Shown here piece after piece: positions 4,451 through 62,190 of a stretch of 64,000 nt of DNA. The position numbers were made by a program, and so were the translations under genes. Below the pieces are notes generated by a model that saw only the letters and a list, made by a program, of their open reading frames with translations, did not search any database and was not told where the DNA came from. The first letter of the stretch is position 1; the number at the start of each line of letters is the position of its first letter. Source of the DNA: Scyliorhinus canicula. Taxonomy: Eukaryota. The stretch is taken from assembly GCF_902713615.1 (NCBI RefSeq), contig NC_052158.1:52856823-52920822 (forward strand), read 5' to 3'.

Positions 4451-6242
4451 AGATAAGCAGTAAGTAATAGATAGAGCGAAGGAATGACGCCACAACCAAT
4501 ATATCAGATCTGAGCTCTGCAGTCCTGCCATATTCAGCTGTGAATGGTGGTGGACAATTAATTGGAAAAGGAGGCTCCACAAATATCCCCATCCTCAATG
4601 ATGGAGGCGCCCAGCATATCAATGACGAGTGCAGGAGGGCATTCCAGGAGCAGCACCAGCCATACCTAAAAAATGAGGTGTCAAACAACAGAAGCAACAA
4701 GTAATAGACAGAGCTAATCAATCCCACAACTAACAGATCAGATCTAAGCTCTGCAATCCAAATCAGATGTTTATGGGAACACCGCCCGGCTGGGGTCTCC
4801 TCAGCGAGGCCGGTTGATGTCGCGAGGCCGATCGATCCTGCGAAGGTAGAGGTAAGTCAGCTTTTAAGTCTACTTCACTCTGCTAGACTGGATTCTGCCC
4901 ATCTAACCAGATCTCGCGGGGCGTAATGGCTGTCGGAAATCCTGGAAGAGGGAATCTCCTGACATGTACGATGGAACACGGCTGGTCGATGGTAGCCGTA
5001 GAGCTCAGATGGGTTGAATAGCCACAGGTTTCCCACTAATATTCCAAAGCCAAGACCACCACCATCTAAAAGGACAAGGGCAGCAGATACCTACCATTCC
5101 TCGACAAGTCACTCATCACCCTGACTTGGAAATATATCGCCCCTCCTTCACTGGTTCAAAATCTGGGAACTCCTTCCCTAACAGCACTGTGGGTGCGGCT
5201 ACACCACATGGGCTGAGTGGTCAAAGGCAGCTCATCACACCTTCTCAAGGACAACGGAGGATGGGCAATCAATGTTGGTGTAACCAGCGACACAAACATT
5301 CTTTGAAATAATACAAAATGTGCTGAAAGACATTTGGTGGAGGTGGTTCCCCAAACAGGAAGAGACCCTGGGAGGGTGTCCCAACTCTCTGAAATAGCCT
5401 GTGGGGGGGGAGGGGGTGAACCCCAGATAGTGGGGAAGATGATCCCCATACACTGAGAGCCTGTGGAACAGTGGGGTGACCGTACCCAGGGTCTAATGGA
5501 GAGGAGGTCCCCTTGGCTGGAAACAGGGATGATGAATCTTACACAGACTGATCCCAAAATGGAGGCTCAGAGAGCGAGAGTGAGGGCCATTACTAAATGC
5601 AAATGGAGCAGGGCGGCTCTGCTCTCTCCCCTCTCCTTGTGTGGGGTTGGTGTTTGGGACTTGCTCTGATGTCTTTCTCTCTCTCTCTTGTATTGGTGAG
5701 TCCCAGTATTCCTGGCTTCTGCTCCTGGCAGCACTCTGGTCCTAGCCTTAATGGCTCCAGACAGTTCTCTGGGATGTCTCTCCCTGGACTCCGGGTCCCT
5801 TCCCCAGTCTCTCTTACCCACCTGGCTCTGCTCCATGTTCTCCTCTCTTCCCTCTCCTCTCTCTCTGCTGAGTCTCTGGGCCCTGGCCTTGTTCCATGCT
5901 CCCTTGCGGGTCCCACTTCTGCTGTACAAGACCTATTCCAGCCTCCTTCCCCATACTCCATTGCCTCCGCCTCTCAACCTCTCCTGCTGACCCCTTCCTG
6001 CTCTCACTTTAGGCCTCAGGCCTGGCTGTGGAGGTGACCTACTTTTCCAGGCAAAAGGCAGTTTGACTTGAGACTGGGTGGTTACTAATTGATTGGGGGA
6101 CAAGGTGCTGCTGCGAGACAAAAGGGGGTTTCCGGAGACTATCCTAGCAGGGCACGGTGATGGAGAGGGAGGGGAGCAGGTCTAATGCAATCCTGTGGAG
6201 TTAATACTTTGGTTCACTAACTCACAAAATTTACAGACCCAT

Positions 6243-6730
6243 CAGCTTGGTGGGTTAACACTGCTGCCTCTCAGCTCCAGAAACCTGGGTCCAATTCTGA
6301 TCTTGTGAGTGGCCTTCTGGCCATTCTCTGTGTGGAGTTTGCACTTTCTCTCCCCGTGTGTGCGTGGGTTTCCTACGGCTGCTCTGGTTTCCTCCCACAG
6401 TCCAAAGATGTGCAGGTTAGATGGATTGGCCATGCTAAATTGTTCCTTAGTGTCCGGGATTGGCCATGTTAAATTGTCCCTTAGTGTCCTGATAAAGGAG
6501 CTGTGCGCCGAAAGCTAGTGATTCCAAACAAACCGGACTTTAACTTGGTGTTGTAATACTTCTTACTATGCCCACCCCAGTCCAACATCGGCATCTCCAT
6601 ATCATCCTAAAGATTAGTTGGAGTTACTGGGTTATGGGGATGGATGGAGGCGTGGGCAATCTTTCCTCGGGCCAGTACAGACTCTATGGGTCGAATGGCC
6701 TCCATCTGCACTGCAGGGATTCTAAATGAT
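6243..6730 (+). mobile_element. Degenerate V-SINE containing a Penelope-like terminal fragment (~6483-6605)
   Basis: V-domain gtgggtttcc...ctctggtttcctcccacagtccaaaga; the insert (ccgaaagctag...ccccagtccaac...catctcc) resembles PLE terminal repeats. Confidence 0.6.
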
Positions 6731-6751
6731 CTCCATGTTGTCTCCCAGAAC

Positions 6752-7967
6752 TAGAACATAGAACATAGAACATTACAGCGCAGTACAGGCCCATCGGCCC
6801 AAGATGTTGCGCCGTCCTGTGAAACCCCTCTAAAGTCCCTCTACACTATTCCCTTATAGTCCATATGCCTATCCAATGACCATTTGAATGCGTTTAGTGT
6901 TGGCGAGTCCACTACTGTTGCAGACAGGACATTCCACGCCCTTACTACTCTCTGAGTAAAGAACCTACCTCTGACATCTGTCCTATATCTATCTCCCCTC
7001 AATTTAAAGCTATGTCCCCTTGTGCTGGACATCACCATCCAAGGAAAAAGGCTCTCACTGTCCACCCTACCTAATCCTCTGATCATCTTGTATGCCTCAA
7101 TTAAGTCACCTCTTAACCTTCTTCTCTCTAACGAAAACAGCCTCAAGTCCTTCAGCCTTTCCTCATATGATCTTCCCTCCATACAAGGCAACATTCTTGT
7201 AAATCTCCTCTGTACCCTTTCCAATGCTTCCACATTCTTCCTATAATATGGCGACCAGAACTGCACGGAATACTCCAAATGCGGCCGCACCAGAGTTTTG
7301 TACAACTGCAACATGACCTCATGGCTCAGAAACTCAATTCCTCTACCAATAAAAGCTAACACGCCGTACGCCTTCTTAACAACCCTCTCAACCTGGGTGG
7401 CAACTTTCAGGGATCTATGGACATGGACACCGAGAGATCTCTGCTCATCCACACTACCAAGAATCTTACCATTAGCCCAGTACTCTGCCTTTCTGTTATT
7501 CCTTCCAAAATGAATCACCTCACACTTTTCTGCATTAAACTCCATTTTGCACCTGTCAGCCCAGCTCTGCAGCTTATCTATGTCCCTCTGTAACTTGTAA
7601 CATCCTTCTGAACTGTCCACAACTCCACCGACTTTAGTGTCATCTGCAAATTTACTAACCCATCCTTCTACGCCCTCCTCCGCGTCATTGATAAAAATGA
7701 CAAACAGCAGCGGCCCCAAAACAGATCCTTGTGGTACACCACTAGTAACTGGACACCAGTCAGAGCATTTCCCCATCAACCACCACTCTTTGTCTTCTGT
7801 CAGCTATCCAATTTCTGATCCAAACCGCTAAATTACCCTGAATCCCATGCCTCTGTATTTTCTGCAATAGCCTACCGTGGGGAACCTTATCAAACGCTTA
7901 CTGAAATCCATATACACCACATCAACTGCTTTACCCTCATCCACCTGTTTGGTCACCTTCTCAAACT
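6752..7967 (-). mobile_element. 5'-truncated CR1 LINE with an open 312-aa RT C-terminal frame
   Basis: GVPQGSVLGPLLF, KFADDTK and LVRPHLEYSVQFWSP motifs; (TAGAACA)n tail at 6752. Confidence 0.95.
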
Positions 7968-8051
7968 AGGGAACAAATGAGACAAAGAGTCTGAATACAA
8001 TTCCTGATAAGATGGGCCAGTTGATATCCCTTCACTCAGGGTCTCTCCCAG

Positions 8052-8187
8052 TTCTGGGAAATTCCCTTCACTTCCCAATTCCTCATCCTGAATCCCTGCT
8101 TCCCAATAAAACCACAGCAAACACTCCCTCGTCCCCTCCCCCAATCTTAGCGATTCCCGGAAACGACAACAATTCCGGGAAACTCCC
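8052..8187. promoter_or_regulatory. Cluster of STAT (GAS) and NF-kB sites
   Basis: TTCTGGGAA (8052-8060) overlaps GGGAAATTCCC (8056-8066); TTCCCGGAA at 8154-8162; TTCCGGGAA (8173-8181) overlaps GGGAAACTCCC (8177-8187). CCAAT at 8103 and 8141; GC-box-like cccgccc near 8217. Confidence 0.8.
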
Positions 8188-8238
8188 GGTCAAAGCGGGA
8201 GGAGTTGGGGTACCTTCCCGCCCTGAGGGAGAGAGACA

Positions 8239-8305
8239 GGCCAATCAGAATAAAGAGCTGAGATGAATCATCTGTTGCCGGGCAGAGTCTGAGAATTCAG
8301 GTTGT
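8239..8305 (-). promoter_or_regulatory. MHC-type S-X1-X2-Y enhanceosome module (RFX/CREB-AP1/NF-Y)
   Basis: Minus strand reads ACAACCT-16nt-CCCGGCAACAGATG/TGATTCA-TCTCAGCTCTTTATT(15nt)-CTGATTGGCC. The HLA-DRA module as I recall it is GGACCCT-16nt-CCTAGCAACAGATG/TGCGTCA-TCTCAAAATATTTTT-CTGATTGGCC, so both sequence and spacing match. Confidence 0.88.
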
Positions 8306-8368
8306 TTCCAGTCAGCCGAGCTAAGGAACAGCCTCTGCCGCCCCCCTGTGGAGAAAGAGGGAACTGCA

Positions 8369-8533
8369 ATGGCTCATTCATTGCTGGAGAATGGAGACTG
8401 GAGGGGGCTGACAGAGAGAGAGTACAGCAGCAAAGAGAAACCCCTCCATTCTCCTTCTGAAGAGGCTTCAGGAACAGAGGGACCTGGGGGTCTATGATTC
8501 CATCTGTGAACAAGGGCAGTTGGTTCTCATTGG
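8369..8533 (+). other. Candidate first exon of an unidentified gene next to the SXY/kB/GAS promoter
   Basis: ATG at 8369 in good context (gcaATGG); 42-aa ORF stops at 8497; donor-like GG|gtgagg at 8534. One extra AG in the (AG)5 run at 8413-8422 would open the frame through to the donor. No homolog recognised. Confidence 0.3.
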
Positions 8534-9084
8534 GTGAGGATTTAGTCTGAGAGCTGAATTAGGAAGATTTCTCTCACACACAAAGTATCACATTACAGTC
8601 ACCTTGCTGAACAATCCCACACCCCTGGGTCTGCTCACAGCAGGCTCTGCACCCCTTCAACATGTCAACATTCTTCCCCGGTTCTTGTGCTCTCATCTCT
8701 GCTCACAACTGCAACCCCCCTCCCCCCACCCCTCCAACCCACTGCACCCCCCCACCCCTCCAACCCACTGCACCCTCCCCCCTCACTCGCCCTTTTCCTT
8801 CCCTGAGCTACTCTCCTACCTACCTCTCGAATACCCTCCAGATTCCCACAGCTCCTAAAGTCCTGCTCTTGTTCACGAGATGCTCTCCCTCCTCCTCCCC
8901 AAGGCACCACTGGCAAATTCCACCCTCCCTCCAGCCCGTCTCTCTCCCCACCCTCCACCCAGCACCACTTACTGGACCCTCCCACCGCCTCCCCCTGCAG
9001 CCACTATCCAGCCCATGTCGGAGAGTCAGGAGTGGTTTTGTAGTTCAAAGGAGTTATTGTGGGCAGAGGTGCAGAGCTGGGGGA

Positions 9085-9300
9085 AGTCAGGAGTTGGGGG
9101 AGCAGAGCCAAGGGGATATCAGGAGTTGGGGAGCAGAGCCGGGGGGATATCAGGAGTTGGGGGAGCAGAGCCGGGGGGATATCAGGAGTTGGGGAGCAGA
9201 GCCGGGGGGATATCAGGAGTTGGGGGAGCAGAGCCGAGGGGATATCAGGAGTTGGGGAGCAGAGCCGGGGGGATATCAGGAGTTGGGGAGCAGAGCCGGT
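9085..9300. repeat. Second, shorter array of the 30-bp G-rich minisatellite
   Basis: About 7 units of GGGGGATATCAGGAGTTGGGGAGCAGAGCC; ends in ggtgtcga like the first array. Confidence 0.93.
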
Positions 9301-9304
9301 GTGT

Positions 9305-9660
9305 CGAGGTAGACCGCGACCTGGATGGAAGTTTTCCACAACCTGCTGGAAAATGGCACACACCGAGGAAACCCTGAAAGGTAAACGGATGTACCCGTAC
9401 AGGCCCTGGATGTGTGAAATGCCACAAGTCATGTCCAGCTTTGTGACTGTGCAACCTCCGCTGAGCTCACATACAGGTCCTCAATTCGGGGGCCGGGGAA
9501 CGGTCCAAACAAGAGACCCGGTTTACTGCCATTTTGTAGTCACCACACAAGTGAACGGAGCCATTGGACTTCAGAACAGGGACGACCGGGGAAGCCCAAT
9601 CCGAGAACTAAACTACTTGAATTATGACCAGATGCTCCAAATGATTCAATCCTTATCAAC
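9305..9660 (-). mobile_element. Gypsy RT fragment
   Basis: THKGLYxYIRLPFRVSSVCAIFQQVVEN-like RT motif. Confidence 0.7.
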
Positions 9661-10089
9661 CTTTTAAAAAATTCAGTTATGGGATGTGAGCATTTCTGGT
9701 TAGGCCAGCATTTATCGCCCACCACTAGTTGCCCTTCGGAAGATGGTGAATCACTTTCTTGAACCGCTACAGTTCCTGGGGTGTAGGTACACCCGCTGTG
9801 CTGTTAGGGAGGGAGTTCCAGGATGTTGCCCCAGCGACAGTGAAGCAACGGCGATACATGCCCAAGTCAAGATGGTGAGTGACTTCCAGGTGGTGAGGTT
9901 CTCAAGTATCTGCTGCTCTTGTCCTTCTAGATGGTAGTGGTCGTGGGTTTGGAAGGTGCTGCCTAAGGAACCTTGGCGAGTTCCTGCAGTACATCTTGGA
10001 GATGGCGCAGTGATGTCCTTCAGGCACAGGGCATACACGGCCAGTCGGGCTAAATCCAGCACAGTTGTGCCTGCGGGTCCATACGACCA

Positions 10090-10780
10090 TAAGACATAGG
10101 AGCAGGATTGGGCCACAGAGCCTTCTACAGCCTCAGAAGTACGTTTTCTGGTCTTGTATTCTAGCCCTCTCGACATGAATGCTAACATTGCATTTGCCTT
10201 CTTAACTACTGACAACCTGCACATTAACCTTAAGAGAATCATGAACAAGGACTCCCAAGTCCCTTTGTGATTCTGCTTTCCTAAGCATTTCCCCATTTAG
10301 AAAATAGTCTATGCCTAAATTCCTCCTTCCAAAGTGCATAACCTTACACTTTTCCACATTGTATTTCATTTGCCACTTCATTGCCTGTCCAAATCCTTCT
10401 GCAGCCCCCTTTCTTCCTCAATACTACCTGTCCCTCTACAGATCTTTGTATCATCTGCAAACTCAGCAACAATGAAAAATTGTGGTCCCAGCACAGACCC
10501 CTGAGGCACACCACTAGTCGCCGGCTGCCATCCTGAAAAAGACCTCTTTATCCCCACTCTCTGCCTTCTGCCAGTCAGCCAATCCTCTGTCCATGCCAGA
10601 ATCTTACCCTTAACACCATGGGCTCTGAACTTATTTAACAGTCTCCTATGCGGCACCTTATCAAAGGCCTTCTGGAAATCTAAATAAATCACATCCACCG
10701 GTTCTCCTTTGTCTAATTTCCTTGTTACCTCCTCAAAGAACTCTAACAGATTTGTCAGACACGACCTCTTTGTCCACACT
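10090..10780 (-). mobile_element. CR1 fragments, deleted
   Basis: RSCLTNLLEFFEEVT, YLDFQKAFDKVPH, GVPQGSVLGP and FADDTK motifs. Confidence 0.9.
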
Positions 10781-12330
10781 GATCCTGGCCATGGCCCGCT
10801 TTATGGTGACCAGGCCCCTCCTGGAATATGCCGGGGAATTTCACCAAACCTCCTTCCAGCAAACCTGCTGCCAAACCAACAGCAGGTGCCACTGCCAATC
10901 GCAGCCCAGCAAACTCTGTCCACCGCAGTGTAGCAGGTGCCACTGCCAATCGCAGCCCAGCAAACTCTGTCCACCGCAGTGTAGCAGGTGCCACTGCCAA
11001 TCGCAGCCCAGCAAACTCTGTCCACCGCAGTGTAGCAGGTGCCACTGCCAATCGCAGCCCAGCAAACTCTGTCCACCGCAGTGTAGCAGGTGCCACTGCC
11101 AATCGCAGCCCAGCAAACTCTGTCCACCGCAGTGTAGCAGGTGCCACTGCCAATCGCAGCCCAGCAAACTCTGTCCACCGCAGTGTAGCAGGTGCCACTG
11201 CCAATCGCAGCCCAGCAAACTCTGTCCACCGCAGGGTAGGCTTGCTGTTTGCTGTCTGTATGTGACGGGGCCCATCAATATACCTTCTGACACCAATGGG
11301 CCTCCCCCCGTTTACGTTGCCAACTAGGCACCAGTATCCCTCAACATCAATGTCTGGGGGTCGGACCGAATTCTGTTGAAAGTGCGGCACCTGACCACGG
11401 AGACCGCTGCCCTGGAGACAGCTCCATTTGGATGGAGTGTCCATTTATCTGTCGGGTCATCTGGATGGGGGCAACTCGTCCAGTACAGCTGTTCGTAAGG
11501 GGGCGTCTTCTACCCCCATGTGGTAAGCCCGGACACATAGACTTCAATCGCGCCCAGTCAGGCGACAGACAAATGCAGACAATTGATTGGCCCAGTTGTG
11601 GCGGCTGGATGGTGCCAACCCATAATCACCATCCGGGCCTTCGTTCTCAGGGGAAAGCTCACGGTGGCTTTCGGGGCCTCTGCACCAGTGGCCGGCTTCC
11701 CTGTGGGTCTGCCCCATTGAGGCCCTGCAGGCCGCAGACAAAATGATCCTGCAGAGTCTCATTCAATACAGCACTATACCTGCAGCTTTCCGCTAGTTTC
11801 TCAGTCAGGAAAAAAAATAATCGCTGGTCAATTCGCCCTGGGCCTGGGAGGAGGTATGGAAGTGAAAACGGTGAACAATGCGCCGGGGTTTTGGGTGGTA
11901 ATGATTCCCCACGAGGGCCATCGAAATGTCAAAAGACCAGGTACTGGGCGCAACTAGGTGAGTCAGACTGTTAATTATGCTATAGGTTGGCCTTTCATCC
12001 CCTATAATCGCATTCGTCTGAAAAAAGTATCACATCCGTTCGATGTACTGCTCCCAGTTGTCTGTACCCGCCTCGAATGGTTCCAACTTCCCAATGTGGA
12101 GCATCTCTGCAGGCGGGTTGGAGGCCACCGTGGGCCGAAACCAGATGGTTTGGCTTTGCAGCACCCAGTGCCACCGGCGGCTCCACTTTAACATTGTTGC
12201 CAATGTAATATCTAAGCTGAGAGGGTCTCCCTCCACGACCTGCACCCAGGTTGGTGTTTTCAATACTGTGAGGGCTCCTCACATTAAGGGGGAATCTCAT
12301 CCCAAAGCTGGGGAATTTCATATGCATTGA
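10780..12330 (-). mobile_element. Decayed Gypsy element (LTR-like part, gag start, protease, 3' region) containing a 51-bp minisatellite
   Basis: MLHIGKLEPFEAGTDNWEQYIERM gag start; protease-like segment at 11400-11480; about 7 x 51-bp units at 10882-11233. Confidence 0.65.
10882..11233. repeat. 51-bp tandem repeat, about 7 near-identical copies
   Basis: GCAGGTGCCACTGCCAATCGCAGCCCAGCAAACTCTGTCCACCGCAGTGTA repeated. Confidence 0.95.
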
Positions 12331-13089: not shown

Positions 13090-13441
13090 GCACGGTAGCA
13101 CGGTATCATTGTGGATAGCACAATCGCTTCACAGCTCCAGGGTCCCAGGTTCGATTCTGGCTTGGGTCACTGTCTGTGCGGAGTCTGCACATCCTCCCTG
13201 TGTGTGCGTGGGTTTCCTCCGGGTGCTCCGGTTTCCTCCCACAGTCCAAAGATGTGCAGGTTAGGTGGATTGGCCATGATAAATTGCCCTTAGTGTCCAA
13301 AATTGCCCTTAGTGTTTGGTGGGGTTACTGGGTTATGGGGATAGGATGGAGGTGTTGACCTTGGGTAGGATGTTCTTTCCAAGAGCCGGTGCAGACTCGA
13401 TGGGCCGAATGGCCTCCTTCTGCACTGTAAAATCTACTATG
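13090..13441 (+). mobile_element. tRNA-derived V-SINE (HE1-like), full length
   Basis: A/B-box head (gcacggtagc...ggttcgattc), V-domain, and CR1-like 3' tail gatgggccgaatggcctccttctgcactg. Confidence 0.9.
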
Positions 13442-57235: not shown

Positions 57236-58133
57236 GCATTTTGGGGTTCTCTAATCCCTGGCCCATAACAGTCTGGTTTCCGTTTCAGGAGACCAGTGTT
57301 TAATGACGCTCGCCCAAGGTCTCCGAGGTGAAGGTGTTGGACCTCAAAGCCACAGGTACCTTGGGAATCTGCAGATTAGAATGAGACTTACGGTCTTGTT
57401 CTAATACGCAGATTTGCAACATCTCACAAGATTGTGTTGAATCTTGTGAGGCGTTGCAAGCTGGGTAGATCCCGGGAGCGGGGTCTCCTGGCTTTCATCG
57501 CCCTCACTGCGTCACAGCGAGCTGCTTTGCAGGCATAGCGTGGCTGCTGGATCGCACCCTATTCCTCACACGCAATGTCAGTGTGGTGATGAACTGGGAA
57601 TTGTTGTTTTTCCTCTCCCCAGAACACTGAAACCACCCTCCCCAACCCAGGGGCACCTGCCTTCCCATACCAATCTCTCTGAGGCACCAGATCACAGTCT
57701 CATCACCCTGAGACATGGATACACACCCTTCCTCCAGGGCACTGAAAGTGCCCACATTCCTCCATGGGACACCCCAATCTCCAGAATGCACTGAAATAAT
57801 GATAACCCATCCCCAGGGGAACCAAATGTTCCACACTCTGCCCAAAGAGCACAGCCTCCTCTCAACAATCCCCCCACAGTCCACTGGTTAGCCCCTCAAC
57901 AGGGCAAAGACATTCTCTCCCATCTTGAGCGGGCATCACACCTTTCTGCCCCATTCTCCAGAGAGATCATGTCCCCCATCTCCATCGGACAAACGGACCC
58001 CTCCCTATACCTTCACTCAGATATCAGACCACTGATATTGGCCACCATTTCCTGACCTCACAAACCAAGCCATCACCACATTACTGAACCTAAGTCACAA
58101 GAAAAATACATGCGACGGAGGATGAGAACTCAC

Positions 58134-58394
58134 CACTAGTCTGGTTGGTCTTCTTCATTAGGATCTGAATATTGGCCCTTCCCCATTGCTCCCATTCCTG
58201 TGCCTCCCGCGTGTACCGCTCCCAGTATGCGGGTCCCTCATTCTCTGCGATCCAGCGCTGTGAAGGAATCATCTCCTTCCGAACACTGTCATAGTAAACA
58301 ATCTGCACGTCGTCCATATAACCCACAACAACAAAGTCAGGTACGCCAGGAATAGGGGACATAGCAGTGTAGAAATAATGCAGAGAATGAGAGC
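58134..58394 (-). CDS. MHC class I heavy chain, alpha1-domain exon (261 bp, phase 1-1)
   Basis: Acceptor ctttgtgtttcag at 58395+ and donor G|gtgagt at 58133-58128. Open frame (G)SHSLHYFYTAMSPIPGVPDFVVVGYMDDVQIVYYDSVRKEMIPSQRWIAENEGPAYWERYTREAQEWEQWGRANIQILMKKTNQTS shows class I hallmarks SHSLxYF, GYxDD, YDS, YWE and the NQT glycan site. Confidence 0.96.
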
Positions 58395-58578
58395 CTGAAA
58401 CACAAAGAATAAGAAAGACATCAGGACATTAACTCTAAAACACCAACCCCAGAGAGAGAGAGAGAAAGAAAGAGAAAGAGAAAAAGAGAGAGAGTGAGAG
58501 AGATTGAGAGAGAGAGATCAGGACAAGAACCCCAAAACACCAACCCCAGAGAGACAGATAGACATCTGGATATGAACC

Positions 58579-61500
58579 TGTCACAAGATAAGGACAATTA
58601 GATTCCAGATGACCTCATCCGAATCGGAGGTCTCCCAGGGTTTCTCCCTTAACTGGAAGCTCAGCTCTCCAGTATAAAGCCGCTGCCTGGGAGCAGCTCG
58701 GGGTGGAGGCCCTTTGGGGAGCGGAGAGTGTAATATTGGGAATAAATAGAATCTTTATTTACCACCTGGCTGATGAGAATAAATGGAGCTGCTGCCGACG
58801 CCAGACACTACACATCAGAGCCACTTAGAGAGGCCTCGCATCCTTCCGCTGACATGCCACCCATTGGTAAACTTGAGCCTTTTCAGGCAGAGGTTGATGA
58901 CTGGGGATGTCGAAAAAATGCAATACATTTTGCGTACAAATGGGATCGACGGGAATGTGCAACGGACAATGGTGTTGCTTACGGCTTGCGGGGGCGGGGT
59001 CCACATACAGCCTCATTAAGAGCCTCACCCACCCACAGCCGCTGGATACCTGGCTGTTCACCGCGTTGGTGGCCTCAGTGAAGGGGCATCTAGACCCGCA
59101 ACCGCTATTAATCGTCCGAAGATTCCTCACAGCCGCTCAGACCCAGTCGGAATCGACCAGCAACTTCATGGCTCACCTGCGAAAATCAGCAGAAACATGC
59201 GAATTTGGTGCCGATCTTTTTTTTTTTTTTATAAATTTAGAGTACCCAATTATTTTTTCCAATTAAGGGGCAATTTAGTGTGGCCAATCTACCTACTCTG
59301 CACATCTTTGGGTTGTGGGGGTGAAACCCACGCAGACACGGGGAGAATGTGCAAACTCCACACGGACAGTGACCCAGGGCCGGGATTCGAACCCGGGTCC
59401 TCAGCGCCGTAGGCAGCAATGCTAACCACTGTGCCACCGTGCTTTTGGTGCCGATCTTAATGAATCACTGCGAGACAGATTAGTTTGTGGAATCTGTGCC
59501 GGCGACACACAGAGAAAAGTTCTGGGCGTCACTGACCTGATATTGCAAAGCACTGTGGAGATTGCCATCTCCCGTGAAAGCCCGGCAAACGGGGTTCCAG
59601 GAGCTCAGACGAATGGTGGTCTGAACCTCGGCTATCAAACTGCCCGCCACTGGCTCCCGCTCCGGAGGCAGAGCCCCGACAGTGGGCGCCCTCCACAGTG
59701 ACACAGGGCACCACCTCTGAGGCCCGGAATGACACAATACGGTGACCGGGAATATCATTCCTGGCTGGTGACCACCAGCCGTTGGATACCAGGGAACAGC
59801 CGGCCTAGAGAGGGCCCTCTATCCTGCCACCCCACTAGGCGAAACCGCCACCAAAGGGACCAGGCCCCTCCGTGGACAATGAATAGGAGGCCCACCGCAG
59901 GCTGTATTGCATTCCTTCGTCTTGGTTCGATCCTTTGCGAACACCTTTAAGTTTCGTCCCACCGGACATTGGTGGGAAATTCCACCGGGGCCAGGATCGA
60001 GCCGAGACTGACGCTTGATGACGTTCGCCTTTATTCACCTTCGCGGTGGGAAATTCAGTGTAAATCCGGAATTTTGGAGAATGAGCCACTGGGACACCAG
60101 CCGTTGTGTTGGCCCAGATGGTACCAGTCTCCATCGAGTGCGGGCACAAGGACACAAATCCCGTACCAGCCTCCCCGAACAGGCGCCGGAATGTGGCAAC
60201 TAGGGGCTTTTCACAGTAACTTCATTTGAAGCCTACTCATGACAATAAGCAATTTCATTTCATTTCATTTCATTCATCAACATGTGGGCCACCTGCAAAG
60301 TCGCATCCAAGAATTGCCAGTTCCGATTGTAGAGTTATCAGCCCAAAACTGCCCCCAGCTCAAACTGACACCTCCGCCCAGTCGCCAGCATTGGTTTTGG
60401 ATGCACCTACCGTAGAGAAAACTGGTCTTGGACGTACAGGACGGTGAAATGATGAACTACGAGAAACCCTTGGACACTGATTCAGAGGTCGACATGGACA
60501 TGTTGCCACCACCCGAGCCAACGGTGTCTGTTGCAGCACCTATGACCCCACCGAGACGTTCTGCCTGAAGGCGATGCTCCCCAGTCCGGTACAGACGTTT
60601 CGTTTTGGTCTTGGATGGCCGTCTCCGGGCTCAGACGCCTCGACCACCTCCGGGCTCGGACGCCTGGACCATCTCCGGGCTCGGACGCCTGGACAACCTC
60701 CGGGCTCGGACGCCTCGACCACCTCCGGGCTCGGACGCCTCGACCACCTCCGGGCTCGGACGCCTCGACCACCTCCGGGCTCGGACGCCTCGACCACCTC
60801 CGGGCTCGGACGCCTCGACCACCTCCGGGCTCGGACGCCTCGACCACCTCCGGGCTCGGACGCCTCGACCATCTCCGGGCTCGGACGCCTCGACCACCTC
60901 CGGGCTCGGACGCCTCGACCACCTCCGGGCTCGGACGCCTCGACCACCTCCGGGCTCGGACGCCTCGACCACCTCCGGGCTCGGACGCCTCGACCACCTC
61001 CGGGCTCGGACGCCTCGACCACCTCCGGGCTCGGACGCCTCGACCACCTCCGGGCTCGGACGCCTCGACCACCTCCGGGCTCGGACGCCTCGACCACCTC
61101 CGGGCTCGGACGCCTCGACCACCTCCGGGCTCGGACGCCTCGACCACCTCCGGGCTCGGACGCCTCGACCACCTCCGGGCTCGGACGCCTCGACCATCTC
61201 CGGGCTCGGACGCCTCGACCACCTCCGGGCTCGGACGCCTCGACCACCTCCGGGCTCGGACGCCTGGACCACCTCCGGGCTCGGACGCCTCGACCACCTC
61301 CGGGCTCGGACGCCTCGACCACCTCCGGGCTCGGACGCCTCGACCACCTCCGGGCTCGGACGCCTGGACCATCTCCGGACTCGGACGCCTGGACCATCTC
61401 CGGACTCGGACGCCTCGACCACCTCCGGGCTCGGACGCCTGGACCATCTCCGGACTCGGACGCCTCGACCATCTCCGGACTCGGACGCCTCGACCATCTC

Positions 61501-62190
61501 CGGACTCGGACGCCTCGACCATCTCCGGACTCGGACGCCTGGACCATCTCCGGACTCGGACGCCTCGACCATCTCCGGGCTCGGACGCCTCGACCATCTC
61601 CGGGCTCGGACGCCTGGACCATAAGACATAGGAGCGGAATTAGGCCACTCGGCCCATCGAATCTGCTCCGCCCTTCAATAATGGCTGATATTTTCTCATT
61701 CCCATTCTCCTCCCTTGTCCCCATAACTCCTGACCCCTGATTAATCAAGAGCCTATCTATCTGTCTTAAAGACACTCAGTGATTTGGCCTCCACAGCCTT
61801 CAGCGACAAAGAGTTCCACAGATTCACCACCCTTTGGCTGAAGAAATCCTTGCTTAGATACGAGGCCTAAAACTGCTCCTAATATTCCAAATGGGGTCTG
61901 ACCAGAGCCTTACATAGCCTCAGAAGTACATCCCTGGTTTTGTCCCAGTCGCAGATATGGACATGGACATATCTCCGGATTTGGGGGATATAATAACCCT
62001 CAGGAAGGTCACAAGATAAGGACAATTAGACTCTAGATGACCTTCTCTGAATGAGAGTTCCCCTGGTAACGAGGGGGCGGGTTCCACCATTAACTGAGAG
62101 CTGAGCTCTCTCAAATAAAAACCCCAGCCTGGGAGCAGAGGAGGCCCTTCCGGGAGTGTGGAGTGTAATATTGTGAATAAATAGAGCGGA
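58579..62190 (+). mobile_element. Internally deleted Gypsy element in MHC intron 1, antisense to the gene, with nested SINEs, a 25-bp VNTR and a CR1 fragment
   Basis: Related LTR copies (tcacaagataaggacaattaga...) at ~58579-58810 and ~62008-62190; gag MPPIGKLEPF; V-SINE 59215-59443 (-); tRNA-SINE ~60150-60280; CR1 tail 61620-61945 (-). Confidence 0.8.
60620..61620. repeat. CpG-rich 25-bp minisatellite (CGACCACCTCCGGGCTCGGACGCCT), about 40 copies
   Basis: Directly visible; 25-aa periodic ORFs in all six frames reflect a stop-free 25-nt unit. Confidence 0.96.

What the first reader, a model, noticed from the sequence alone, without database searches (positions are those of the whole stretch)
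8050..8305. Orphan MHC-style promoter: HLA-DRA-like S-X-Y module joined to doubled GAS/NF-kB composite sites
Seen: on the minus strand, ACAACCT-16-CCCGGCAACAGATGATTCA-15-CTGATTGGCC, followed by TTCCGGGAA/GGGAAACTCCC, TTCCCGGAA and TTCTGGGAA/GGGAAATTCCC within 140 bp. Two of the GAS sites physically overlap a kB site in the same geometry. Known: SXY modules with fixed spacing bind RFX/CREB/NF-Y and recruit CIITA or NLRC5; the CAACCT S-box is the class I/NLRC5-type variant and the X-Y part is class II-like. Inference: this is a conserved antigen-presentation promoter or enhancer inducible by IFN-gamma/IL-6 and TNF. No class I/II leader exon follows in the SXY direction (a CR1 lands at 7967). It may therefore be a bidirectional promoter (TAP1/PSMB9-like), drive an unknown plus-strand gene, or act as a distal enhancer for the class I gene ~50 kb away. 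A hybrid SXY with direct STAT/kB composites in a shark would inform how MHC regulation arose.
Basis: partly seen in the sequence, partly recalled or inferred. Interest (0 to 1): 0.82.

Follow-up and report, generated by a model that had tools for sequence, protein, structure and literature searches.

The report
Orphan shark MHC-type promoter module copies
This 250-base stretch is a real MHC-style S-X-Y promoter module, built exactly like the promoters of this shark's own class I genes, but it is one of eight duplicated copies with no gene attached, so it is probably a stranded promoter core or distal enhancer, not a new antigen-presentation gene.

Summary
All motifs sit at the stated coordinates with the stated spacings.

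The stretch is not a high-copy repeat. It is one of eight copies, all on the same chromosome (C13, 51.60-51.86 and 52.83-52.87 Mb). All eight share the S-X-Y core (window 8216-8400). Only three (c1 here, c2, c3) carry the GAS/kB cluster.

A sequence profile built from the eight copies recovered genuine MHC promoter modules elsewhere in this genome:
- modules about 130 nt upstream of class I leader exons at 32.3-32.5 Mb;
- the promoter of the window's own class I gene, 0.7 kb beyond the window's end;
- two modules in the class II region.

All of these align with ours over 78 nt without a gap, so the MHC-type call is supported by in-genome relatives.

The orphan status also holds. No copy has a leader exon or an MHC exon within 10 kb. 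TEs sit where exon 1 should be: a CR1 in c1 and an L1-like fragment in c4/c7/c8. One RNA run gave no reads on c1's unique sequence.

The X1-to-S block is far more conserved than the rest of the core, which hints at retained factor binding.

Best reading: stranded class I-type promoter cores spread by local duplication, possibly still working as distal enhancers. Function is untested. Other X-Y modules were noted earlier in this genome, but not this family.

The parts
8299..8305 (-). S box ACAACCT. AACCT is invariant in all 8 copies. The same AACCT sits in the same register in class I promoters and in one of the two class II-region modules of this genome (the other reads AACTG).
8264..8282 (-). 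X1-X2 box CCCGGCAACAGATGATTCA. This is an RFX-type X1 abutting a TRE/CRE-like X2 (TGATTCA). It matches 19 of 23 bases of a published HLA-DRA X-box probe.
8239..8248 (-). Y box CTGATTGGCC, an inverted CCAAT (NF-Y type). It is intact in 7 of 8 copies.
8173..8187 (+). GAS (TTCCGGGAA) overlapping a kB site (GGGAAACTCC), 52 nt below the Y box in the SXY direction. Copies c2 and c3 read TTCCGGGAAATTCCT at this place.
8154..8162 (+). GAS site TTCCCGGAA, present in c1, c2 and c3.
8052..8066 (+). GAS (TTCTGGGAA) overlapping a kB site (GGGAAATTCC), identical in c1, c2 and c3.
8216..8400 (-). Core shared by all 8 paralogous copies (83-96% identical). It holds S-X-Y plus about 95 nt on the S-box side. The 38-nt X1-to-S block (8266-8303) is nearly invariant.
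7964..8215 (-). Segment found only in subtype A (c1, c2, c3). It carries the GAS/kB cluster and locally retains CpG (o/e 0.81 in 8100-8230).
6755..7963 (-). 5'-truncated CR1 (its RT open frame is 6841-7779) inserted 275 nt below the Y box in c1 only. It is absent from c2 and c3.

Best explanation
Window 8050-8305 is copy c1 of an eight-member, chromosome-restricted family of MHC class I-type S-X-Y promoter cores that have no gene attached ('solo' promoter modules).

The core has the exact architecture of this shark's working class I promoters: S AACCT, 16 nt, X1X2, 15 nt, Y. By analogy, it is the platform for the RFX5/RFXAP/RFXANK, CREB/ATF or AP-1-like, and NF-Y enhanceosome that recruits NLRC5 or CIITA.

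The copies arose by local segmental duplication, with recombination or gene conversion among them. Their downstream parts were replaced or invaded by TEs. Subtype A (c1-c3) carries three STAT (GAS) sites, two of them fused to NF-kB sites, 52-190 nt below Y.

In c1 a CR1 cuts the sequence 275 nt below Y. No transcript is seen, so c1 is most likely not a working promoter today. The strongly conserved X1-to-S block suggests that the copies may still bind factors and could act as distal elements.

Shown: the motifs, the copy number, the in-genome homologs, the orphan status and the conservation pattern. Inferred: factor binding, the origin from class I promoters, and any present activity.
For: - Family: 8 copies only, all on C13.
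- In-genome relatives: the profile R1 of the family hits C13:32423479, 32312102, 32512575 and 32379973. Each lies about 130 nt upstream of a leader exon MIGLMALLLLCxEVSAG|GT of a class I gene.
- R1 also hits L055 679-724/759-798. This is the promoter of the window's own class I gene, with leader MRRLMLLVILCGAVSAG|gtgagt.
- R1 also hits C13:42465355 and 43426740 in the class II region (E 0.005 and 0.026).
- Six module types align over 78 nt with zero gaps, at 51-62% identity to ours.
- Orphan status: tblastn with class I and II exons and a leader regex (positive controls worked) find nothing in 20 kb around each copy or anywhere in the window.
- TEs at the exon-1 position: CR1 in c1 and an L1-like fragment in c4/c7/c8.
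- No RNA reads on the unique sequence 8100-9699 in X8.
- Constraint: 3 parsimony changes in the 38-nt X1-S block against 64 in the other 141 columns (scan-corrected permutation p 2e-4). A priori motif columns show 8 changes in 36 against 59 in 143 (p 0.04).
- Factors: RFXAP and RFX5_N domains are encoded in the genome. CIITA and NLRC5 orthologs are reported in whale shark (PMC8455134).
Against: - Similarity to the genuine promoters is confined to about 46-78 nt. Common descent is therefore likely but not proven; motif-level convergence under the same architecture cannot be excluded.
- Three copies (c5, c7, c8) have a 2-nt deletion in the X2-Y spacer. c8 has a broken CCAAT and a changed X2, and c7 a changed X2. 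This argues for decay in part of the family.
- The near-invariant X1-S block argues against plain neutral relics.
- The 92-99% identity of c1 and c3 over 7964-8700, against about 78% in the flanks, includes a TE-derived piece. It therefore reflects recent duplication or gene conversion, not selection.
- RNA evidence is thin. Only one raw oligo-dT run of unknown tissue was read. Contigs from one sample (S1) and from X2 cover a piece just below the third GAS/kB site in the CR1-less paralogs. This could mean weak activity there.
Confidence: 0.5

Rival explanations
1. The copies are working distal enhancers, like a locus control region. They are still bound by the RFX/CREB/NF-Y enhanceosome, and in c1-c3 also by STAT and NF-kB. 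They boost the extended-MHC class I genes at 52.91 and 53.02 Mb, or other genes, in response to IFN-gamma/IL-6 and TNF-type signals.
For: - The X1-to-S block is nearly invariant across 8 copies that otherwise differ by up to 17%.
- The Y box is intact in 7 of 8 copies.
- CpG is retained in the GAS/kB block (o/e 0.81 against a window median of 0.52).
- The GAS/kB clustering is improbable by chance.
- Other catshark SXY modules also carry a kB site about 95 nt below Y.
- Human MHC-II has distal S-Y enhancers and X box-like elements that bind RFX and CIITA (cited in PMC2278383).
- A piece next to the third GAS/kB site of c3 recurs in 6 runs of one sample.
Against: - There are no accessibility or binding data of known type.
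- c1 is 50 kb from the nearest class I exon, and the cluster at 51.6-51.86 Mb has no class I exon detected nearby.
- The spacer deletions and the broken Y box in some copies argue against uniform function.
- Conservation of the block could come from gene conversion.
Confidence: 0.28
2. It is a live promoter, in the SXY direction or bidirectional, for an unannotated transcript. This would be a noncoding RNA or an exon spliced to a distant gene, mainly from the CR1-less copies c2 and c3.
For: - Contigs in X1 and X2 start at window-equivalent 8062-8098 and run colinearly across the 7964 junction without the CR1. That is 140-170 nt below the Y box in the SXY direction, which is about where a transcript from this promoter might start (records 5 and 16).
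- S1 runs hold 11-20% of the words of L003:1585-2185.
Against: - The library type of those runs is not on record, and they may be DNA.
- Their depth is low (2.5-5.6).
- X2 also shows a trace on the S-box side (8300-8499).
- No conserved ORF, start codon or splice donor lies downstream in c1, c2 and c3. The candidate ATG at 5826 is GTG in c3 and deleted in c2.
- The plus-strand ATG at 8369 is out of frame between copies and is GTG in c7 and c8.
- X8 has zero reads on 8100-9699.
Confidence: 0.12
3. The resemblance is chance, or the module is cargo of an old repeat: a duplicated piece of junk DNA that happens to contain SXY-like and GAS/kB-like words.
For: - The module sits in a TE-rich gene desert.
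- One profile hit (C3:42213573, E 0.026) lies in what looks, from my own recollection and untested here, like a diverged SINE copy, and shares 32 of 40 nt with the X region.
- Single GAS/kB composites occur at chance frequency genome-wide.
Against: - The gap-free 78-nt register is shared with five independent genuine or MHC-region modules.
- 5 of 8 non-family profile hits fall in about 2 Mb of MHC clusters within a 4.2-Gb genome.
- Only 8 copies exist, all within 1.3 Mb.
- There is no Rfam hit and no RNA structure signal.
- The similarity to that putative SINE copy does not extend beyond 40 nt.
Confidence: 0.07

Closest known systems
Proximal S-X-Y (W/S, X1, X2, Y) enhanceosome module of MHC class I promoters (NLRC5 type; Ludigs et al. 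2015, PMC4374748)
   Same: - The order is S-X1X2-Y, and the S-X spacing is 16 nt, the value reported for NLRC5 targets.
- S is AACCT, and Y is an inverted CCAAT.
- The module aligns gap-free with the modules about 130 nt upstream of catshark class I leader exons. The X2-to-Y half (GATGATTCA...TTATTCTGATTGG) is nearly identical to them.
   Different: - No TSS, leader exon or class I gene follows; TEs or unrelated DNA take their place.
- There are eight copies.
- STAT and kB sites lie below Y, whereas enhancer A and the ISRE lie above S in mammals (own knowledge).
- The real catshark class I promoters have an extra X-Y unit about 90 nt upstream, which this family lacks.
HLA-DRA-type class II X-Y module (CIITA type)
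   Same: - X1X2 is CCCGGCAACAGATGATTCATCTC against the published DRA X-box probe CCTAGCAACAGATGCGTCATCTC, 19 of 23 identical (PMC4806502).
- X1 is identical over 11 nt to the X boxes of leader-bearing class II-type promoters at C13 42.45-42.47 Mb. The X1-to-ATTGG offset is 33 nt here and 34 nt there.
   Different: - X2 is TGATTCA, not a CRE-like TGCGTCA.
- No class II exon lies nearby.
- Profile R1 did not report the two leader-bearing class II-type modules.
- The rest of the DRA comparison (spacer and Y box) rests on my memory of the human sequence.
Distal S-Y enhancers and X box-like (XL) elements of the human MHC class II region (Krawczyk et al. 2004; Gomez et al. 2005; cited in PMC2278383)
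   Same: These are S-Y-type modules that lie away from any promoter inside the MHC, in several copies. They are reported to bind RFX and CIITA and to keep regulatory function.
   Different: - Those elements have in vivo binding data; these have none.
- Here the copies are clear paralogs of one another (83-96% identical).
- They lie about 9 Mb from the class II genes.
- Three of them carry added STAT/kB composites.
Promoter-only remnants of duplicated MHC class I pseudogenes
   Same: The module sits in an extended-MHC region with class I genes at 52.91 and 53.02 Mb. It has been duplicated locally and invaded by CR1, L1-like and SINE elements, as is usual for class I gene fragments (own knowledge).
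   Different: No remnant of any class I exon was found next to any of the eight copies. The X1-S block looks constrained.

Membership tests
MHC S-X-Y enhanceosome module | S/W box about 15-17 nt upstream of X1 | tested here: met
   ACAACCT lies 16 nt before CCCGG.... AACCT stands at the identical column in catshark class I promoters and in one of the two class II-region modules. A 16-nt S-X distance is reported for NLRC5 targets (PMC4374748).
MHC S-X-Y enhanceosome module | X1 box (RFX5-complex half site, GCAAC.GATG type) | tested here: met
   GGCAACAGATG is invariant in 7 of 8 copies; c7 has one change, at its last base. It is identical over 11 nt to the X boxes at C13 42.45-42.47 Mb and matches the DRA probe at 19 of 23 bases.
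MHC S-X-Y enhanceosome module | X2 box (CRE/TRE-like) directly abutting X1 | tested here: inconclusive
   TGATTCA is in the right place and is identical to X2 of catshark class I promoters. It departs from the CRE (TGACGTCA) and the TRE at its centre. It is changed in c7 and c8. Binding was not tested.
MHC S-X-Y enhanceosome module | Y box (inverted CCAAT) at a fixed distance from X | tested here: met
   CTGATTGG lies 15 nt after X2. The offset from X1 to ATTGG is 33 nt, against 33-34 nt in five other in-genome modules. A 2-nt deletion is present in c5, c7 and c8, and the CCAAT is broken in c8.
MHC S-X-Y enhanceosome module | Lies just upstream of the TSS or leader exon of an MHC or antigen-presentation gene | tested here: not met
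   No leader-like exon and no MHC I/II or C1-set exon lies within 10 kb of any copy or in the window's first 30 kb. Positive controls found the leaders of L049-L051 and L055.
MHC S-X-Y enhanceosome module | Occupied by RFX, CREB, NF-Y and CIITA or NLRC5 in vivo, and dependent on the transactivator | not testable with these tools
   Only the parts list can be checked. RFXAP (147 bits) and RFX5_N domains are encoded in the genome. CIITA and NLRC5 are reported in whale shark.
GAS / NF-kB cytokine response element | TTCNNNGAA and GGGRNWYYCC consensus sites, clustered | tested here: met
   Three GAS sites and two kB sites lie in 8052-8187. The window holds 15 GAS matches and 16 kB matches (about 10 distinct kB sites) in 64 kb. 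A single composite site is at chance frequency genome-wide.
GAS / NF-kB cytokine response element | Inducible STAT or Rel binding and transcriptional response | not testable with these tools
   No data are available.
   BLAST and the profile over the whole genome find 8 copies, all within C13 51.60-52.87 Mb.
Structured non-coding RNA gene | Rfam match or a fold more stable than shuffled sequence | tested here: not met
   There is no Rfam hit at E up to 1. Fold z-scores are +1.28 and +0.10.

The most novel reading that the evidence does not exclude
The catshark keeps an amplified set of gene-less S-X-Y enhanceosome platforms in its extended MHC. Three of them have fused STAT/NF-kB composite sites directly below the Y box. 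They act as NLRC5/CIITA-dependent, cytokine-gated distal enhancers for class I genes. That would be an early-vertebrate counterpart of mammalian MHC distal S-Y enhancers, with the cytokine inputs placed downstream of SXY rather than upstream.
Probability: 0.2. Interest if true: 0.6.

Novelty: new member of a known kind. Interest (0 to 1): 0.4.

Why it matters
The result shows that the S-X-Y architecture, down to single-nucleotide spacing, is already fixed in a cartilaginous fish. It also gives a ready, aligned set of catshark modules for testing how NLRC5/CIITA control arose:
- class I promoters with their leader exons;
- class II-region modules;
- eight gene-less copies.

The gene-less copies are a natural experiment. 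If they are bound and active, they are ancient distal MHC enhancers. If they are not, they show how fast a detached enhanceosome site decays.

For annotation, the finding itself is not a hidden gene. The window's class I gene has its own promoter and leader just beyond the window's end.

Tried and rejected
- Plus-strand gene from the module: the ATG at 8369 is followed by a 4-nt indel between copies and is GTG in c7 and c8. No conserved donor is present. Rejected.
- Minus-strand first exon further down (window 6240-5000, which abutted the module before TE insertions): the candidate ATGGAGCAGAGCCAG|GTGGGT is GTG with a weakened donor in c3 and deleted in c2. The 122-aa ORF 5593-5961 is not conserved. 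Rejected.
- 'ATGGCGGATCC...' below c4/c7/c8 is part of a 5'-truncated L1-like element (zf-RVT motif, polyA), not a leader.
- Solo LTR: homology of c1-c3 continues past both putative ends, so no LTR boundaries exist. Rejected.
- ncRNA: no Rfam hit and no fold signal.
- Derivation from the tRNA-type SINE at 13094-13436: alignment score equals that of shuffles.
- Pfam whole-genome scans for MHC_II_beta (no hits at all, control silent) and C1-set (swamped by Ig clusters) were uninformative.
- A marginal C1-set tblastn hit near c4 is not an Ig domain.
- The true class II alpha promoters could not be located in 42.69-42.72 Mb.
- Homology between the nearby 31-nt minisatellite and the class I intron-1 minisatellite: none.
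- The high c1-c3 identity cannot be used as evidence of selection, because the tract includes TE-derived sequence.
- Cross-species conservation could not be tested; no elasmobranch genomes are within reach.

Full report
**1. The observation**

- ACAACCT at 8305-8299;
- 16 nt of spacer;
- CCCGGCAACAGATGATTCA at 8282-8264;
- 15 nt of spacer;
- CTGATTGGCC at 8248-8239.

In the same direction follow three GAS sites. Two of them overlap kB sites in one geometry (TTCYGGGAAAYTCCC). On the plus strand they read:
- TTCCGGGAAACTCCC at 8173-8187;
- TTCCCGGAA at 8154-8162;
- TTCTGGGAAATTCCC at 8052-8066.

A 5'-truncated CR1 occupies 6755-7963.

The clustering is not random. The window holds 15 TTCNNNGAA matches in 64 kb and about 10 distinct kB sites. 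Three GAS sites and two kB sites fall in 136 nt.

A single composite 15-mer is at chance frequency in the genome: 36 matches against 17 for the reversed control, and about 31 by my estimate from its length. Only the doubling carries weight.

The pattern GCAACNGATGNNTCA-N12-18-YTGATTGG occurs in 4.2 Gb only in this family (6 hits, control 0).

**2. It is one of eight copies**

BLAST of 8040-8320 against the window's own genome gives eight places. All are on contig C13:
- five at 51.60-51.86 Mb on the plus strand (c7, c4, c8, c5, c3);
- three at 52.83-52.87 Mb on the minus strand (c6, c2, and c1, which is this window).

So it is not a high-copy repeat.

All eight share window 8216-8400, which is S-X-Y plus about 95 nt on the S side. 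Four or five copies extend to 8496. The GAS/kB segment (7964-8215) exists only in c1, c2 and c3, at 94-96% identity. The others diverge 16 nt past the Y box.

The flanks are mosaics of TEs:
- The CR1 is specific to c1.
- c4, c7 and c8 share a 5'-truncated L1-like fragment with a polyA tail starting 100-200 nt below Y.
- c2 and c6 share a different sequence beyond 8496.

This mosaic pattern points to duplication with recombination or gene conversion among members. In line with that, c1 and c3 are 92-99% identical over 7964-8700 but only about 78% identical in the colinear flanks. The high-identity tract includes a TE-derived piece, so it is not evidence of selection.

**3. It really is an MHC-type module**

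I built a sequence-only profile of the 97-nt S-to-Y segment of the eight copies (A1 and R1) and searched the whole genome with it. Besides the family it returned eight weaker hits. Five of them lie in the MHC gene clusters of C13.

- Three hits (32.31, 32.42 and 32.51 Mb; E about 1-2 each) lie about 130 nt upstream of an ATG that opens a signal-peptide exon, MIGLMALLLLCxEVSAG, ending in a GT donor. At 32.31 and 32.42 Mb this is 1.6-2.8 kb upstream of Pfam-detected class I alpha1 exons on the same strand; at 32.51 Mb the nearest detected alpha1 exon is about 19 kb downstream. A fourth gene of that cluster has the module too.
- A local search just beyond the window's right end found the same arrangement upstream of the window's own class I gene. 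It reads: distal X-Y, S CAACCT, X CAGAGACTGATGGCTCA, Y CCAATTGG, leader MRRLMLLVILCGAVSAG|gtgagt.
- Two further hits (42.465 and 43.427 Mb; E 0.005 and 0.026) lie in the class II region.

Six module types, including ours, align over 78 nt without a single gap. AACCT (AACTG in one class II-region module), G.AAC.GATG, X2 and ATTGG stand in the same columns. Identity to ours is 51-62%.

Even the X2-Y spacer word CTCTTTATT is shared with the window's class I promoter.

The X box matches a published HLA-DRA X-box probe at 19 of 23 positions (PMC4806502).

The S-X distance of 16 nt is the value reported for NLRC5-occupied modules, where the S box sets NLRC5 specificity (PMC4374748).

RFXAP and RFX5_N domains are encoded in this genome. 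CIITA and NLRC5 orthologs are reported for whale shark (PMC8455134).

AACCT is not class I-specific here. X1 is closest to the class II-region modules, and X2-Y to the class I promoters.

**4. It is orphan**

In real catshark class I promoters the leader exon starts about 115-130 nt below Y. None of the eight copies has one. The evidence:
- A leader regex that recovers all four control leaders finds nothing in 20 kb around each copy or in the whole window.
- tblastn with class I alpha1 and alpha2 exons, class II alpha1 exons and C1 exons finds nothing credible.
- DNA search with the leader finds nothing.
- Candidate start codons below the module are not conserved between c1, c2 and c3.
- The plus-strand ATG at 8369 is out of frame between copies.
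- The neighbourhood is a TE-rich desert.

Apart from TEs, the 20-kb surroundings of the copies share nothing but the module. No gene travels with it.

**5. Activity**

Reads of one raw oligo-dT RNA run (X8) and contigs of three other runs were laid on window 5300-11299. Depth sits on the SINE and CR1 parts only. The unique stretch 8100-9699 has zero reads in X8.

Low-depth contigs of X1 and X2 cover 7964-8062/8098 and continue across the junction without the CR1. They therefore come from c3 or c2.

Six runs of one sample hold 11-20% of the words of the segment below c3's Y box. Their library type is not on record. This may be weak transcription starting about 140-170 nt below Y, or an accessibility-type DNA signal. 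I cannot tell which, and I record it as unexplained.

The module is not a CpG island (o/e 0.31), apart from the GAS/kB sub-block at 0.81. There is no Rfam hit and no RNA fold signal.

**6. Constraint**

Within the 179-column core, the 38-nt block 8266-8303 (X1, spacer and S) shows 3 parsimony changes on the family tree, against 64 in the other 141 columns. The permutation p allowing for scanning is 2e-4.

The motif columns defined beforehand show 8 changes in 36, against 59 in 143 (p 0.04).

Signs of decay also exist. There is a 2-nt spacer deletion in c5, c7 and c8. c8 has a broken CCAAT and a changed X2, and c7 a changed X2.

**7. Reading**

Most likely (about 0.5), these are stranded class I-type promoter cores. 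They were spread by local duplication in the extended MHC and have lost their genes to TE turnover. c1 itself is cut by a CR1 and is silent.

The conserved X1-S block, the non-random STAT/kB cluster and the recurrent kB site below Y in other catshark modules keep a working distal-enhancer reading alive (about 0.28). That would parallel the distal S-Y enhancers and X box-like elements of the human class II region (cited in PMC2278383).

A live promoter for an unannotated transcript from c2 or c3 is possible (about 0.12). Chance or TE cargo is unlikely (about 0.07).

The species name (small-spotted catshark) comes from earlier notes of this scan and was not verified here.

**8. Novelty**

S-X-Y modules, distal S-Y enhancers and promoter remnants in MHC regions are all known. 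What is new is this specific gene-less, eight-copy family and its STAT/kB-bearing subtype in a shark, together with the documented gap-free architecture shared with the species' real promoters.

I rate it a new member of a known kind, of moderate interest, with function untested.

Noticed in passing
L055:500-800 (G000:C13:52921322-52921622; window-equivalent about 64.5-64.8 kb, just past the window's end), minus strand: The promoter and leader exon of the window's own class I gene lie about 6.2 kb upstream of its alpha1 exon (58132-58395). The order is: distal X-Y unit, S CAACCT, X CAGAGACTGATGGCTCA, Y CCAATTGG, leader MRRLMLLVILCGAVSAG|gtgagt, then a roughly 61-nt minisatellite intron.
   Followed up: partly
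L049, L050, L051, L057 (C13 32.31-32.51 Mb): Class I genes of this cluster share a promoter with two tandem X-Y units (the proximal one with S AACCT). L049-L051 also show the leader MIGLMALLLLCxEVSAG and a 61-63-nt minisatellite filling intron 1; for L057 only the module itself was seen.
   Followed up: partly
L046:1501-1565 (+) and L048:1501-1553 (-) (C13:42465355 and 43426740): These are two paralogous S-X-Y modules in the class II region. Each is followed about 95 nt below Y by a kB site (GGGATTTTCC or GGGAGTTTCC) and then by what looks like a Penelope-type RT fragment. No leader exon was seen, so they may be orphan too.
   Followed up: partly
L027 (minus) and L028 (plus), C13 42.451 and 42.469 Mb: An earlier scan note described these X-Y modules as having 'no class II gene attached'. 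Each is in fact followed about 50 nt below Y by a paralogous signal-peptide-like ORF (MISCPNRSCGFCVLLSAL... and MVSFPNGNCCFVV...). They are probably real class II-type promoters with leader exons.
   Followed up: partly
window 60600-61700: A CpG island (GC about 0.75, CpG o/e about 1.2) lies between the class I alpha1 exon and its leader. Its gene or role was not examined.
   Followed up: no
window 9060-9300 and 1930-2900; also beside c3 and c6: A 31-nt minisatellite (GGGGATATCAGGAGTTGGGGAGCAGAGCCGG) lies 0.6-0.8 kb on the S-box side of copies c1, c3 and c6, so it belongs to the ancestral duplicated unit. It has no similarity to the class I intron-1 minisatellite.
   Followed up: partly
G000:C13 51602260/51621862 and 52854900/52835323: The spacing c7 to c4 (19,602 nt) and c2 to c6 (19,577 nt) is nearly identical in the SXY direction. 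This may reflect a larger ancient duplicated unit now overwritten by TEs.
   Followed up: no
L003:1585-2185 (copy c3) and window 7964-8098: Six runs of one sample (S1) and run X2 hold a 100-160-nt piece next to the third GAS/kB site of the CR1-less paralogs. The library type is unknown, so whether it is RNA or an open-chromatin DNA signal is undecided.
   Followed up: partly
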